A stretch of 64,000 nucleotides of DNA from Ostrea edulis (lineage: Eukaryota): contig NC_079169.1 of assembly GCF_947568905.1 (NCBI RefSeq), positions 60,264,001-60,328,000 on the forward strand. The letters are read 5' to 3'. Position 1 is the stretch's first letter. The number at the start of each line of letters is the position of its first letter. Of the stretch, positions 40,613 through 45,270 are shown one piece after another. The notes below the pieces were generated by a model that was not told the origin of the DNA, ran no database searches, and worked only from the letters and a program-made list of their open reading frames with translations. The position numbers and the translations under genes were made by a program.

Positions 40613-43074
40613 CTACTTGGATATGGCCTTCATGCAGTTAAGGTAGGTTGCAAAGCCTTTTTTGTCCGTCAGGCATTTGTAGGCAACATTAGAGCCGAAC
40701 ATTTCTCCGCAGGCTTCACATGTTTCTACAAATGTGTAAAACGTTGTTCCAGGTGGTACATTTCTGAAATTATATTAATCAAGTATACACATGTTTATTG
40801 AGTTTACATTATAGACACAGAGTTCGATAAAATAACCATTAGAATTTGTTTACGAATAGTTTATCTATCTCTTAATTTATTGATTCTAGTGATTGATAGT
40901 TTGACTTTTACAAAGTATACAGTATTAGCATGAGATTATCCTTTTTTAAATTATGATAAATTAGAAATATCTTCAATTCATTTGCTGATTTAAAGCACGC
41001 TACAATTGAATTAAAATTATTTTTAATTGTACACAATGATCGAATCATTACGCGTATTAAATGAATATTAGGCGCCAGTAATTCATTTTATGTTAAAATT
41101 GAAACCTTGTTTGATTAAATGTATATTATAGGATTAAACATTCTTTTTGAAGAATTTATCGATGTGTAAACTCTGGACATTTTAATCACAAACTGAATAA
41201 AAGTGCGAATTTTAGGTTAAGTTTGTGAGTAAAATGTCCAGAGTTTACACATCGATAAATTCTTCAAAAAGAATGTTTGATTCTTATAATTCCATTTCGT
41301 TCCCTGTATTATCAATTTCAAAAATTTGAATAGTTTCCCCGCACTATGTTATTTGTTTTCAGGCGCATATGTATACATAATGTACATAGCGCTTTTGGAT
41401 TTATTGATGCGTAAATTCTCGTTTAGCTTTTTTTTTAGTCCAATCAAAACAATTGTAATAAATAACATTGGAATTATCATTAATATTGAATTAATGTGTA
41501 TGATATTTGGCACTCCTCTGATGCGATCAGGGTTTAGCTGTTATGGTGGATGCAGTGGATTATTTGGTTTGTGGAAGAAGTTCCAAAAGGCTTGTGTCGG
41601 GGGAGAAGTTATTATACCATTCCTAGCTCGGATTGAAAATATCTTTAAATGAATTGGAAAGATCAAGAAATCTTTTAGAGCGAATGCTAAATGAATGTTA
41701 AATGAATAATTGAGAACAATAAATGATTTACGGATATGCTTAATGACATTAAAAATATTTGAATTAATTTGTGCAACATTTTAAATCATGCTCGCACCTT
41801 ACGCAAAACTTCATTTATTGGTATCTTGAAATGATTAGAGATATCTTTAAATATGTAAATATATGTTAATCTGGCGTTCTGTAAATTAAAAAAAAATCAC
41901 GAATCAGAGCGCTCCCAAAATATTGTGAAAATAGACTTTATTCAGAATATTATTCCATGGCGTAAAATGGGCGGGGCTTGTATGGAAAGTAAAGATTACG
42001 TCAAGTAAAACGTAAGAAACGAATGTCTAGATGTAAGGGTAATATGCGAATCGATGTAACAGATTCCAAATTTGAAACATTTAATTGTAAATTCATTAAT
42101 TGATAAGACAACTTTTTCAGTAAAAATATGTTGTTACACTGTTATCTACTTGTCACTTATTATCGGATCCTGTCTGCTTAATTTTTCAGTTTGTATAAAT
42201 TGACTTCTTAAGGTACTTTGAAACTATAACGTCATAATACTGAAACGACAAGACATTTTCAAATCTGTCATCAGGCTTCCCTTCATTGTTGAAGGCTTTG
42301 CTACAATACTGAGCGCAAATTGAAACACAAATTGTCTTGATCTAATAATGGTACTCGTAGTGCGATTGTTGAATTTTAAACTTTTTAAAATTCTTTTTCA
42401 AAATTTTTATTTTTATTTTATTTATTTATTTATTTTTTTGGTATACCAAACACCCTATTCCAAACTGGTTTAGGACATCATAGGGAAATGTTAATTTCCT
42501 GTATATCACTTAAGGAACCTTTACATCAACTGTTAACAGTAGAGGAGTATGAAACAAGCATTTTCAGTGGCCCTTATAAATACCTACTTCTCGACAGTGG
42601 CCTTTATAAATCCCTACTTCTCGACAGTGCATGCCCTTAAAAACCTCTATATCTCGACAGTGGCCCTTAAAAACCCCTACTTCTCGACAGTGGCCCTTAA
42701 AAACCTCTACATCTCGACAGTGTCCCTTAAAAACCTCTACTTCTCGACAGTGGCCCTTAAAAACCTCTACATCTCGACAGTGTCCCTTAAAAACCTCTAC
42801 TTCTCGACAGTGGCCCTTGTAAACCCCCACTTCTCGATAGATAGATCATTTAGGATTCCAATCTTGTGTATTGAGATAATCTATTCCATCATATACGGAA
42901 ACATGAAAAGTGATGGTTCAGTTTAATTCAATCATTAAAGCTAAATCAATATCACCTAGTACTTAATTACCTTCTGACCAGAGTGCTCAGTAACGGATAC
43001 TGTTGATATGATGTCTGTATGGTGCTGACGAATACCACGACCAGGAGGCCAACATGAATTCCTTTGATTGCCAT
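40613..43074 (-). CDS. Small secreted cysteine-containing prepropeptide (84 aa), CHH/ITP- or eclosion-hormone-like candidate
   Basis: Exon 43099-42971 (acceptor tttacttttcAG, cacaaaATGG at 43074, donor AG|GTAATT) plus exon 40763-40613 (acceptor ataatttcAG, TAG stop). Phase-2 join gives MAIKGIHVGLLVVVFVSTIQTSYQQYPLLSTLVRRNVPPGTTFYTFVETCEACGEMFGSNVAYKCLTDKKGFATYLNCMKAISK. AATAAA at 40385-40380. Confidence 0.78.
41127..41290. mobile_element. Fold-back element with perfect 49-bp inverted arms
   Basis: 41136-41184 is the exact reverse complement of 41230-41278, around a 45-nt partly paired spacer. Confidence 0.85.
42566..42838. repeat. 30-bp VNTR, ~9 copies
   Basis: Unit ctctacttctcgacagtggcccttaaaaac. 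It explains the periodic ORFs at 42549-42926. Confidence 0.9.
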
Positions 43075-45216
43075 TTTGTGGGACGATGTGTCAGTGTCTC
43101 TGAAAAGTAAAGCAAGATGTGGCAACTGATGGTCGTACTTATACATACGTATATTTTTTTAGTATTCGATGGAAACTGCAATTGATATAGATTATTGAAA
43201 TACACTTTCACAGTTTTATGCAACATGATGTCCAGTCAATAACCTTGCAATAAAATATACGTACTTAATTCTTTAAAAATCCTACACATTTTTAATGACA
43301 GTAACTTGTACTTGTATCATGAAATGCATAGAACTATATGTAATTTTGGCCTTTATAGATGAATAAAATGATAATAATACCATTTTTCACAAACTGCTTT
43401 CAAATAAAAGGCAAGTTAGCAGGGGAAATAGTGCTCTTTATTCAATGCATGCACTCTTTGGCCAAAAGCATTTTTTAAAAATATAAATAATTTTGTATTA
43501 AGTACACAGAGGAGGATTTCTTTGGGAACTTCCTTTTGTCACGTGACAACAGAATACTTTCATGTAAAATTCAAAGTGATCTGTCCTTTACTCCGCCACC
43601 TGAATTGCTATGATAACCCGCTATATATTTTTCGTCGTGAGTCATGCGCTAAAATTTGAGTATTTTCAACTTCCAAGGACAGGCCTATATTTTGCAGTCC
43701 TTCACCGGCAATGGTGACGTCTTCATATGAGTGAATATCTTGGTCCATGGGTCCCCGGGGGTGAGGGGCGGGTACAAAACACTATTAAAGGATGCAACAC
43801 CGGGACACTTTTGTAGATAAACGTTGTTGACAACCAAAGATAAATCTCCTGGATATACAACACCTATACTGAATGTATAACAATTATACTGAACATGGAA
43901 ACTTCCACCCCGTTTTTTTACGTCATGGACCTTGTATCAGGGGTGAGCGGAGTTTTCTGGCTCATTATAGAGAAAATAAATGATTTCTTTTTCATTAATA
44001 TTGGACATCAAGCAGAGAAAAGGTGTCTGTGCATAGTCATGAGGAGGAAACAGTTTCTACCAAAATTGGGAAAATCGTTGCCCATTTTCAGGGGGTTCTT
44101 GTGCTAGGGCGGGACTAAATGGCTGATATAGTGAACATGCATAGCTGGTTTGGGAACAAAATGCAAAACATAAAAACATGTATCTTTGTTATTTTAATCA
44201 CTCAATCAGTCTAATGAAATTCCATTTCTCAGTGTGATAAAGGATTTACCAAGTTCATAATTTCAACACACCCTTCAGCCACGAAATGCAGCACGTTGTC
44301 TCACACATTTTGAAGGTAACACAAATCAACGAACATTAAAAGTAAAGGAAAACTAAAAAGATATACTACTGTGTCAAGCAATTTTAAAATGAGTTTGAAA
44401 TCGTCTGAAAAACAATTCAAACTTTTAGCTTTGATTTACAGGAAACAAGAGTATGAAAAAGAAATAGCCTCGGGGTATAATCAGCAAAACACAAATGGTA
44501 AAGCATCTGGATTTTTTTCATTTTAGTTTAATTGATCAATTAAAGCTTTCAGTAGCGCAAATTTCTTTTCCAGTGGGCTTAATGTGCAGACAATGAAATG
44601 GAGAGTGTTTTCTGAAGGAGCCGTTGTTCACAAGACAAAGATTTAATTGATAATGTACATAACATAGTGATGTATAAAAATCATACATGTATATGAATAA
44701 AGAAAAACTCCATGCTTGAACTCTTTGTTAACTATATAAGTTCTGTTTAAGAATAGATCTTAAATTCATAACGATTAATGATAAAAGTTGATAAAATGGA
44801 TTATTTTAAGGCCATACCGGAAATAGAATACATATACTTATCAATGGCATGACAATAGAAAATCCTTCAGAGTCAATTATTTATATAACTTCACTCCCTT
44901 GGTTTTCTTACTTTTCTACAGGGAATCGCGTATCCATTGAAAATGTTTACGGGTACGTGAGACAGTGTACTGTAGTCTTTTTACTAAACACGGCGCATTA
45001 ATACAACTAACTGATAACGATACTAAACAACAAAAATTAAACCGATATTCAAACGCATCTAAGATATATAAATTTTATACATAGTACTGTGTTTAAATTA
45101 TTGGAATCATAACAACATATTTAAAATCATTTTAAAACAATATCAAAACACAGTTCCATGAGAACTATGGTATTAGATATGAGTATTTAATACCTAGATC
45201 ACAGATGAAGTCTTAC

Positions 45217-45270
45217 CTGAGTCTTCTAAGGCAGATGGTGGATTACCTGTAAATGTCGCTCCAATTTATA
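45217..45270 (-). promoter_or_regulatory. Putative TATA box and short non-coding first exon of the secreted-peptide gene
   Basis: TATAAAT at 45270-45264 (minus). About 50 nt downstream is a strong donor, CTCAG|GTAAGA, at 45217/45216. The gene's ATG exon has an acceptor and so needs an upstream exon. Confidence 0.5.

What the first reader, a model, noticed from the sequence alone, without database searches (positions are those of the whole stretch)
40613..45270. Hidden spliced gene for a four-cysteine CHH/ITP-like neurohormone precursor in a bivalve
Seen: two exons, each under the ORF-track cutoff, join in phase 2 through canonical splice sites into an 84-aa protein. It has a hydrophobic signal peptide (cleavage near residues 22-24), a short spacer ending in a dibasic RR that spans the intron, and a 49-aa peptide with C-x2-C-x11-C-x12-C. 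A Kozak-like AAAATGG, a candidate TATA plus short non-coding exon 1, and a downstream AATAAA complete the gene. Established: type I CHH/ITP precursors are signal + precursor-related peptide + dibasic site + hormone, with disulfides C7-C43, C23-C39 and C26-C52. The family is regarded as ecdysozoan. Inference: the peptide aligns to locust ITP (recalled as IFARLDRICEDCYNLF..SLCRSDCFKSPYFKGCLQAL, versus TFYTFVETCEACGEMF..YKCLTDKKGFATYLNCMKAI). It lacks exactly the two cysteines that pair with each other (C7/C43), as a two-disulfide relative would. CEACGEMFG also resembles eclosion hormone (CAQCKKMFG), so it could be a divergent lophotrochozoan member of either helical neurohormone fold. It is the only intact gene found in ~35 kb of transposon debris.
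Basis: partly seen in the sequence, partly recalled or inferred. Interest (0 to 1): 0.88.

Follow-up and report, generated by a model that had tools for sequence, protein, structure and literature searches.

The report
Oyster four-cysteine CHH-like neuropeptide gene
The two short exons form a real, intact oyster gene for a small secreted hormone-like peptide, but its family (mollusc and annelid relatives of the crustacean hyperglycemic hormone) was already described in 2023, so this is only a new oyster member.

Summary

It is not a chance ORF pair:
- A 69%-identical Magallana gigas protein exists.
- An exhaustive HMMER search found homologues in octopus, scallop, mussels, pearl oyster and a unionid.
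- All share four invariant Cys and an intron inside the second Arg of RR.

The CHH/ITP reading is supported by predicted structure. The AlphaFold2 model (pLDDT 88) has three helices. CHH, ITP, MIH or the CHH-derived spider and centipede toxins rank first in all six fold-library searches run (five libraries). Sequence evidence for that link is only marginal.

The premise that the family is only ecdysozoan is out of date. Koch et al. 2023 (PMC10501145) named this family "CHH DREP". Their supplement lists my octopus and scallop hits with the same phase-2 intron. hhalign of my family profile against their Aplysia founder gives E 2e-14.

One caveat is new. The conserved ecdysozoan CHH intron lies after the fourth Cys, not where this one lies.

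RNA evidence for this species could not be obtained. The scan holds no finding of this family on other DNA.

The parts
45217..45270 (-). Candidate TATA box (TATAAA 45270-45265) and short non-coding exon 1 ending at the donor CAG|GTAAGA (45217|45216). Unverified.
   Evidence: The sequence strings were read. The only indirect support is that a conserved acceptor precedes the ATG exon and that the M. gigas model P0001 carries an upstream exon. tblastn with that upstream part found nothing in the window.
43075..43099 (-). 5' untranslated part of the first coding exon, after the acceptor AG at 43101-43100.
   Evidence: The homologous acceptor and a similar leader (ACTGACRCAYC) are present in the Crassostrea-type contig L001.
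42971..43074 (-). Coding exon A. It holds the signal peptide (about residues 1-23, 43074-43006), the pro-region YQQYPLLSTLVR, and the first two bases of the second Arg of the RR site.
   Evidence: Translation. The M. gigas protein matches at E 7e-10. pN is 0.23 against pS 0.80 versus L001.
40764..42970 (-). Phase-2 intron of 2207 nt, GT 42970-42969 to AG 40765-40764. It contains a 30-bp x 9 tandem repeat (42565-42837) and a hairpin-like inverted repeat near 41140-41265.
   Evidence: I re-derived the same intron position and phase in the scallop gene L004. PMC10501145 supplement file 10 lists it for octopus, scallop and Conus.
40613..40763 (-). Coding exon B. It holds the last base of Arg35, the 49-aa mature peptide NVPPG...AISK (40762-40616) and the stop TAG (40615-40613). 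Cys are at precursor residues 50, 53, 65 and 78.
   Evidence: Translation. Alignment A3 has invariant P3, C15, E16, C18, G19, G23, C30, C43 and A46. The AlphaFold2 model has pLDDT 87.9 and three helices at 8-22, 24-32 and 38-47.
40380..40612 (-). 3' untranslated region up to the first AATAAA (40385-40380).
   Evidence: Pattern scan. No transcript data are available.

Best explanation
This is an intact gene that appears to be unannotated. It is the oyster orthologue of the lophotrochozoan 'CHH DREP' family of Koch et al. 2023, the four-cysteine spiralian relatives of the crustacean hyperglycemic hormone / ion transport peptide superfamily.

Shown here:
- Two coding exons are joined by a phase-2 intron that sits inside the dibasic RR site.
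- The precursor consists of a signal peptide, an 11-13-aa pro-region, RR, and a 49-aa peptide.
- The family is conserved across bivalves and cephalopods, and my family profile matches a gastropod (Aplysia) member.
- The predicted fold is three helices and is closest to the CHH/ITP core and to the shortened CHH-derived HAND toxins.

Inferred:
- The signal peptide is removed near residue 23, and a prohormone convertase cuts after RR.
- The peptide folds with disulfides C15-C30 and C18-C43, equivalent to CHH C23-C39 and C26-C52.
- It is secreted as a neuro-endocrine signal.
- Its receptor is unknown. By analogy with ITP and eclosion hormone, a membrane guanylyl cyclase or a GPCR is the likeliest target.
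For: Gene and orthologues:
- Exon and splice anatomy and translation.
- M. gigas orthologue with 69% identity over 99% of the query, E 1.6e-31.
- Exhaustive HMMER search of 1.84 billion proteins returned 14 hits at E <= 1e-3. Eleven are family members or exon fragments. They come from Octopus, Potamilus, Mizuhopecten, Pinctada, Mytilus and Magallana, plus unnamed run assemblies.
- Family signature alignment.
- Conserved phase-2 intron in the scallop.
- Polyadenylated mRNA-like contigs with an uninterrupted CDS for a homologue whose closest named relative is a unionid.
- pN far below pS in exon A.

Identity with the published family:
- PMC10501145 supplement lists KOF87272.1 (identical to my P0016) and OWF53087.1 (identical to my P0006) as CHH DREPs with the same phase-2 split.
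- hhalign of family profile A3 against the Aplysia founder: probability 98.3%, E 2.3e-14.
- BLASTP of the window peptide against the Dreissena member: E 6e-15.

Fold (models with pLDDT 84 and 88):
- AFDB Swiss-Prot: rank 1 is Penaeus CHH1, TM 0.68.
- AFDB clusters: ranks 1, 4 and 5 are named CHH or ITP-type entries, and unnamed rank 3 matches equally well. TM 0.65-0.72, rmsd 1.7-1.9.
- PDB-wide VIA-align over 48,161 chains: ranks 1-3 are k-Ssm1a, Ssm6a and Ta1a, rank 8 is MIH, rank 23 is CHH-L.
- ESM Atlas shape search: rows 1-2 are MIH and CHH1L.
- Foldseek against PDB: rank 1 is Ssm6a, rmsd 1.8.
- Language-model features give a Crust_neurohorm cluster as top hit for the oyster and mussel members (0.90-0.91, 190-193 shared features).

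Cys register with CHH.
Against: - There is no transcript or peptide evidence for this species.
- No record in the 5.8-billion-protein collection carries this protein.
- The link to the CHH superfamily is not significant at sequence level. No Pfam PF01147 hit occurred in 11 members. A PDB profile search found no CHH, MIH or toxin. hhalign against a decapod CHH profile gave P 0.014, and 8 of 200 column shuffles reached that score.
- The phase-2 intron is not at the position conserved in ecdysozoan CHH genes, which is after the fourth Cys (PMC2841656).
- The function of this family has not been tested in any species (PMC10501145).
Confidence: 0.85

Rival explanations
1. The family is a convergent or orphan helical two-disulfide peptide. 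It looks like the CHH core but does not descend from a common CHH/ITP ancestor.
For: - Sequence similarity to CHH is marginal.
- The peptide has four Cys rather than six, and 49 residues rather than about 72.
- The ecdysozoan family's hallmark phase-2 intron follows the fourth Cys (PMC2841656). Here the whole mature peptide lies on one exon and the intron precedes it.
Against: - CHH-superfamily entries take the top places in six searches across five libraries of up to 2.3 million folds. That is very unlikely for an unrelated three-helix peptide.
- All four Cys fall on the CHH positions that form two native disulfides, and the two missing Cys are partners of each other.
- Language-model features independently point to PF01147 for two members that share about 31% identity.
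Confidence: 0.25
2. The peptide is closer to eclosion hormone (PF04736) than to CHH/ITP. It would be a two-disulfide EH paralogue lacking the EH C14-C38 pair.
For: - One of 11 members hits Pfam Eclosion at E 0.064.
- The octopus member's best language-model neighbours are EH clusters at 0.79, tied with CHH.
- hhalign against Homarus EH gives P 0.048 over the CxxC helix.
- Published work notes EH/ITP resemblance and describes a separate six-Cys oyster EH precursor (PMC8398477).
Against: - No EH entry appears in any fold-search list.
- The EH alignment covers only 13 columns, against 34-38 columns with all four Cys for CHH.
- EH ranks 18th for the oyster and mussel members.
Confidence: 0.1
3. 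The product is secreted but is not a neurohormone. It could instead be a defence, mucus or reproductive-tract peptide.
For: - The earthworm member is reported from body wall and clitellum.
- Cone snails have turned the scaffold into venom components (PMC10501145).
- No expression data exist for oysters.
Against: - The Aplysia member is reported only from ganglia and nerves, and the squid member from brain and brachial lobe (PMC10501145).
- Conus textile expresses a single endogenous copy in the nerve ring (PMC13542836).
- The gene is single-copy in this window.
- Deep conservation under purifying selection fits a signalling peptide better than an effector.
Confidence: 0.1
4. The two ORFs are a chance juxtaposition or a decayed pseudogene.
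For: Both exons are below usual ORF cut-offs. The gene lies in repeat-rich DNA. There is no transcript evidence for this species.
Against: The frame is intact and the splice sites are canonical. All nine family-invariant residues are kept. Orthologues have the same intron position. pN is far below pS.
Confidence: 0.02

Closest known systems
CHH DREP family (doppelganger-related peptides of the CHH type; Koch et al. 2023, Front Mol Neurosci 16:1176662, PMC10501145)
   Same: - Same family. hhalign against the Aplysia founder gives E 2.3e-14 with all four Cys aligned.
- My octopus and scallop homologues are listed in their supplement.
- Both have two coding exons with a phase-2 intron just before the N/S-x-P-x-G start of the peptide.
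- The predicted three-helix fold and the nearest solved structures are the same: k-Ssm1a, Ta1a and CHH.
   Different: - No oyster (Ostreidae) or pearl-oyster member appears in the supplement text held.
- The oyster peptides have a 12-residue rather than 11-residue loop between Cys3 and Cys4.
- They end in AIS(K) without the C-terminal K/R cluster or Gly-amidation signal seen in other members.
- Bivalves and cephalopods have a clear RR site. The Aplysia peptide was described as following the signal peptide directly.
Crustacean hyperglycemic hormone / ion transport peptide / MIH superfamily (Pfam PF01147)
   Same: - Predicted helical core superposes at rmsd 1.7-2.7 A.
- The CxxC helix and the two disulfides equivalent to C23-C39 and C26-C52 are shared.
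- The precursor layout resembles type I: signal, pro-peptide, dibasic site, hormone.
   Different: - Four Cys, not six: C7 and C43 are absent.
- 49 residues against about 72, with no N-terminal segment and no C-terminal helix.
- No Pfam hit.
- The intron is at a different position from the conserved one after the fourth Cys.
- The host is a spiralian.
HAND toxins (Ta1a of Eratigena/Tegenaria, Ssm6a and relatives of Scolopendra), CHH/ITP-derived venom peptides
   Same: They are the best structural matches of all solved structures. They are of similar size (46-52 aa) and likewise lack the terminal helix of CHH/MIH (PMC7560641).
   Different: They are arthropod venom components, whereas this is an endogenous single-copy mollusc gene. 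From my own knowledge, not tested here, they retain three disulfides. Sequence identity is only 16-20%.
Eclosion hormone (Pfam PF04736), including the six-Cys two-ligand oyster precursor Cragi-EH (PMC8398477)
   Same: Both have the CxxC-x(11-12)-C motif and similar size. Sequence and feature hits are weak. EH and ITP are suspected to be related to each other.
   Different: No structural match was retrieved. The alignment is limited to one helix. Oysters already possess a separate six-Cys EH gene.

Membership tests
CHH DREP (spiralian CHH-like peptides, Koch et al. 2023) | Detectable sequence homology to the founding Aplysia californica member and to the listed members | tested here: met
   - hhalign of A3 against the Aplysia sequence: probability 98.3%, E 2.3e-14, 47 columns.
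- BLASTP against the Dreissena member: E 6e-15.
- P0016 and P0006 are the very entries in the paper's supplement.
CHH DREP (spiralian CHH-like peptides, Koch et al. 2023) | Four conserved cysteines (two disulfides) in the pattern C-x2-C-x11-C-x11/12-C | tested here: met
   All four Cys are invariant in 11 sequences. The pairing itself is inferred, not measured.
CHH DREP (spiralian CHH-like peptides, Koch et al. 2023) | Two coding exons separated by a phase-2 intron immediately before the mature peptide | tested here: met
   In the window the split is AG|A at 42971/40763. In the scallop it is CG|G. The paper's file 10 lists the same for octopus, scallop and Conus.
CHH DREP (spiralian CHH-like peptides, Koch et al. 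2023) | Expression in neuro-endocrine or secretory tissue | not testable with these tools
The runs found look like DNA.
CHH/ITP/MIH superfamily (PF01147) | Six conserved Cys forming C7-C43, C23-C39 and C26-C52 | tested here: not met
   Only four Cys are present. They align to C23, C26, C39 and C52, and the C7/C43 pair is absent.
CHH/ITP/MIH superfamily (PF01147) | Significant match to the family profile | tested here: not met
   - 0 of 11 members hit PF01147 at E <= 10.
- PDB profile search found no CHH, MIH or HAND chain.
- hhalign against decapod CHH gave P 0.0026 to 0.16.
- The empirical shuffle p is about 0.03-0.04.
CHH/ITP/MIH superfamily (PF01147) | Helical fold of the CHH core | tested here: met
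   This rests on predicted models only. CHH, ITP, MIH or HAND entries rank first in six searches across five libraries.
CHH/ITP/MIH superfamily (PF01147) | [quoted passage not shown] 2010) | tested here: not met
   The definition comes from PMC2841656. Here the whole mature peptide is on one exon, and the phase-2 intron lies 14 residues before the first Cys. Phase and exon number agree; position does not.
Eclosion hormone (PF04736) | Six Cys and a significant profile match | tested here: not met
   There are four Cys. One of 11 members reaches E 0.064, below the Pfam cut-off. hhalign gives P 0.048 over 13 columns. No EH appears in any fold search.

The most novel reading that the evidence does not exclude
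The two-disulfide spiralian peptides, eclosion hormone and CHH/ITP would be three branches of one ancient bilaterian helical hormone family. They would share the C-x2-C ... C ... C core and signal through membrane guanylyl cyclases, as reported for EH and for Drosophila ITP.

On this reading the intron just before the peptide and the four-Cys state are the ancestral condition. The ecdysozoan intron after the fourth Cys and the third disulfide would be later additions. The oyster gene would then give a simple, single-copy entry point for finding the spiralian receptor.
Probability: 0.2. Interest if true: 0.55.

Novelty: new member of a known kind. Interest (0 to 1): 0.25.

Why it matters
The gene is missing from the protein collections searched, so it is a useful annotation. 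It is short, split by an intron, and sits among repeats.

It extends the published spiralian CHH-like family to true oysters, which are aquaculture species with good genomic tools. It also gives a defined 49-aa peptide to synthesise for receptor and physiology tests.

The comparison flags that the gene-structure argument used to tie this family to ecdysozoan CHH is weaker than stated. The phase is the same but the position differs. The homology therefore rests mainly on predicted structure.

None of this changes the field, because the central idea was published in 2023.

Tried and rejected
RNA evidence:
- The look-up of sequencing runs returned four runs holding 36-77% of words over exons and introns alike, so they are probably DNA.

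Sequence and text searches that gave nothing useful:
- Pfam on the peptide and on 11 members gave only sub-threshold C1_2, ZZ and Eclosion noise.
- PDB profile searches with A1 and A3 found no relevant chain.
- Full-text motif searches for the peptide sequences found nothing, because main texts do not hold them. The sequences turned up only in a supplement.
- A motif search for ITP and EH sequences failed.
- A second motif search gave Homarus sequences, which I used as comparators.
- The last word-index search, meant to fetch a diverse CHH set, returned only three decapod CHHs. The CHH profile was therefore shallow.

Hits rejected or left open:
- P0010 is a repeat protein and P0011 is a 2072-aa protein without the Cys pattern. 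Both are spurious.
- P0014, a spider venom U16-SYTX, probably matches only the signal and pro-region and was not pursued.

Other dead ends:
- The look-up of encoding contigs had no record for the M. gigas protein, so dN/dS could be computed only for exon A.
- tblastn with the M. gigas N-terminal extension did not locate exon 1 in the window.
- Flank-identity figures from global alignment of diverged AT-rich introns were uninformative.

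
Full report
**Observation**

- An acceptor (cttttcAG, 43101-43100) opens an exon. Its ATG (43074-43072) sits in cacAAAATGGca.
- The frame runs 104 nt to AGAAG|GTAATT (donor GT 42970-42969).
- It resumes after atttcAG (40765-40764) at 40763 and ends at TAG 40615-40613.
- Translations of the two pieces join through a split Arg codon (AG|A, phase 2). The product is an 84-aa protein, MAIKG...STLVRR|NVPPG...CMKAISK.
- The N-terminus has one Lys, a 12-residue hydrophobic stretch (VGLLVVVFVSTI) and a small polar end (QTS). That is the look of a signal peptide. No signal-peptide predictor was available, so the cleavage site is an inference.
- The first AATAAA after the stop is at 40385-40380.
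- The TATAAA (45270-45265) and the donor CAG|GTAAGA (45217|45216) of the proposed non-coding exon exist as strings but could not be tested.

**Is it a gene?**

- A word-index search with the 84-aa protein found one relative, an uncharacterised 114-aa Magallana gigas protein (69% identity, 99% coverage, E 1.6e-31). It has the same SYQQYPL.STLVRR|NVPPG junction and four Cys. Its extra 31 N-terminal residues come from an upstream exon of that gene model.
- A Crassostrea-type genomic contig (L001) shows the same exon. It has an acceptor just before a similar leader and the donor AGAAG|GTGAGT in the same phase.
- Between the window and L001, exon A has 19.3 synonymous differences on 24.3 sites (pS 0.80, saturated). 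It has 17.7 non-synonymous differences on 77.7 sites (pN 0.23). That indicates purifying selection on the protein.
- An exhaustive HMMER search of 1.84 billion representatives returned 14 hits at E <= 1e-3. Eleven form one family, from Octopus vulgaris and O. bimaculoides, Potamilus streckersoni, Mizuhopecten yessoensis, Pinctada imbricata, Mytilus trossulus and M. galloprovincialis, plus unnamed run assemblies. All are labelled hypothetical.
- The other three hits are a repeat protein, a 2072-aa protein without the Cys pattern, and a spider venom peptide that probably matches only the signal and pro-region.

The family signature has these parts:
- A pro-region ending in RR.
- A mature start N/S-x-P-x-G exactly 14 residues before the first Cys.
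- The motif C-E-x-C-G-x3-G.
- Cys3 after 11 residues, and Cys4 after 11 residues (12 in oysters).
- A short tail, usually ending in basic residues.
- Nine columns are invariant: P3, C15, E16, C18, G19, G23, C30, C43 and A46.

Further support:
- Several run-assembly proteins are exon-B ORFs read out of the intron (for example ...FC|RNKPSS). This fits the same phase-2 split.
- I re-derived the split in the scallop genome (CG|gtgagt ... tttcag|G).
- Two contigs of about 1 kb from RNA-like assemblies carry an uninterrupted 86/87-aa CDS and a long 3' UTR. One also ends in ATTAAA followed by a terminal A-run. So a homologue whose closest named relative is a unionid is expressed and spliced.
- In the window the family hits only these two exons, so the gene is single-copy here.

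**RNA evidence for this species**

I could not get any.
- The four runs found hold 36-77% of sampled words across introns and exons, so they are probably DNA.

**What is it?**

Sequence profiles alone do not name it.
- Pfam gives nothing above threshold. One of 11 members touches Eclosion at E 0.064, and none touches Crust_neurohorm.
- PDB sequence profiles give nothing relevant.

Structure does name it. AlphaFold2 gave confident three-helix models: the M. gigas peptide at pLDDT 84, and the window peptide with the 11-sequence alignment at pLDDT 87.9, with helices 8-22, 24-32 and 38-47. Every library searched put the CHH superfamily first:

| Library | Top matches |
|---|---|
| AFDB Swiss-Prot | Rank 1 Penaeus japonicus CHH1, TM 0.68; all others below 0.4 |
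| AFDB clusters (2.3 million) | Ranks 1, 4 and 5 named CHH or ITP-type, unnamed rank 3 equally good; TM 0.65-0.72, rmsd 1.7-1.9 A over 42-44 residues |
| VIA-align, PDB-wide (48,161 chains, Foldseek-independent) | Ranks 1-3 k-Ssm1a, Ssm6a, Ta1a; rank 8 MIH; rank 23 CHH-L |
| ESM Atlas shape search | Rows 1-2 MIH and CHH1L |
| Foldseek PDB | Rank 1 Ssm6a, rmsd 1.8 A |

- Ta1a and the Scolopendra toxins are the 'HAND' toxins derived from CHH/ITP, and they lack the terminal helix (PMC7560641).
- Protein-language-model features agree for the oyster and mussel members. The top cluster is a nematode PF01147 cluster at 0.90-0.91, with 190-193 of 256 features shared.
- The octopus member gives EH and CHH tied at 0.79.

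At sequence level I compared profile A3 with Homarus peptides printed in PMC4696782.

| Comparator | hhalign result |
|---|---|
| Homarus CHH | P 0.0026, 38 columns; C15, C18, C30, C43 fall on CHH C23, C26, C39, C52 |
| Second, divergent Homarus CHH isoform | P 0.06, same register |
| MIH-like peptide | P 0.16, CxxC helix only |
| Eclosion hormone | P 0.048, 13 columns |
| Three-sequence decapod CHH profile | P 0.014 |

- In the shuffle controls, 8 of 200 full column shuffles and 5 of 200 Cys-fixed shuffles reached the observed score.
- The sequence signal is therefore marginal.

**Already known**

- The source is Koch et al. 2023 (PMC10501145). Their 'CHH DREP' family was founded on an Aplysia transcript and has two disulfides and three predicted helices.
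- They report expression in Aplysia ganglia and nerves, squid brain and brachial lobe, and earthworm body wall and clitellum.
- Their supplement lists KOF87272.1 and OWF53087.1, which are identical to my P0016 and P0006. It also lists Dreissena, Sepia, Enteroctopus, Idiosepius, gastropods and Lumbricus, and marks the phase-2 split right after RR.
- hhalign of my profile against their Aplysia founder gives probability 98.3% and E 2.3e-14. The window peptide against their Dreissena member gives E 6e-15. Membership in that family is therefore established.
- Their held supplement text has no Ostreidae or Pinctada member of this family.
- A 2026 paper treats 'CHH' as a single-copy endogenous neuropeptide gene of Conus textile, expressed in the nerve ring, from which venom copies arose (PMC13542836).
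- An oyster neuropeptide survey (PMC8398477) describes a separate six-Cys, two-ligand EH precursor but not this gene.

**A caveat on the superfamily link**

- Koch et al. use gene structure as evidence of common ancestry.
- Montagne et al. [quoted passage not shown]
- In the window, the scallop and the listed DREP genes, the mature peptide is uninterrupted. The phase-2 intron lies before it, 14 residues upstream of the first Cys.
- Exon number and phase agree, but position does not. The argument therefore adds little.
- The case for homology with CHH/ITP rests on predicted structure, the Cys register and language-model features.
- I rate common descent with CHH/ITP as likely, at about 0.65-0.7. 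Convergence is at about 0.25. A closer tie to EH is at about 0.1.

**How it most likely works**

Shown:
- The precursor architecture.
- Conservation across bivalves and cephalopods, with my family profile matching a gastropod (Aplysia) member.
- The predicted fold.

Inferred:
- Co-translational removal of the signal peptide near residue 23.
- Cleavage after RR, releasing the 49-aa peptide. The terminal Lys may be trimmed.
- Two disulfides, C15-C30 and C18-C43, locking helix 1 to helices 2 and 3.
- Secretion as a neuro-endocrine signal.

The receptor is unknown. The known receptors of the nearest families are a membrane guanylyl cyclase (Drosophila ITP, and EH) and GPCRs (Bombyx ITP/ITPL), as cited in PMC13311285. 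These are the candidates.

**Verdict**

- The family was published in 2023, so this is a new, apparently unannotated oyster member of a known kind. Interest is modest.
- Other notes of this scan call the genome flat oyster. I did not verify the species. The saturated synonymous divergence from Crassostrea is compatible with that.

Noticed in passing
window 25116-27909 (+): Two large ORFs (244 aa and 551 aa) carry G6PD_N, G6PD_C and a 6-phosphogluconolactonase domain (E 5e-40 to 5e-51). This looks like an intact H6PD-like (hexose-6-phosphate dehydrogenase) gene with few introns, so the CHH-like gene is not the only intact gene in the window.
   Followed up: partly
window 12927-13520 (-): A 197-aa ORF has weak HTH_48 and mariner-type Transposase_1 matches (E about 6e-4 to 9e-4). 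It is a decayed mariner-like transposase.
   Followed up: no
window 42565-42837: A 30-bp unit is repeated 9 times (87% matches) inside the intron of the CHH-like gene. It produces long spurious ORFs on both strands.
   Followed up: no
window about 41140-41265: Two arms of about 38 bp form a near-perfect inverted repeat (…gaagaatttatcgatgtgtaaactctggacatttta… and its complement) separated by about 45 bp. It is a MITE-like hairpin within the intron, seen by eye.
   Followed up: no
P0001 (M. gigas A0A8W8N405) and P0019 (M. galloprovincialis VDI33287.1): Public gene models of this family look mis-built. The M. gigas model starts 31 residues upstream of the signal-peptide Met. The 296-aa Mytilus model, named 'Sushi domain-containing protein' by UniRef, has 210 extra residues ahead of the CHH-like precursor and looks like a fusion with an upstream gene.
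   Followed up: partly
P0014 (Scytodes thoracica venom peptide U16-SYTX-Sth1d): This spider venom precursor matched the family profile at E 9.5e-4. Its signal and pro-region (…SSYSEHPAMRNLVKKN) resembles the oyster …SYQQYPLLSTLVRRN, but its mature part has a different Cys pattern. This is probably chance or convergent pro-region similarity.
   Followed up: no
Literature: PMC10501145 versus PMC2841656: The published statement that CHH DREP genes 'mirror' the ancestral ecdysozoan CHH gene structure holds for exon number and intron phase only. The ecdysozoan intron lies after the fourth Cys inside the mature peptide, whereas the spiralian intron lies before the mature peptide.
   Followed up: yes
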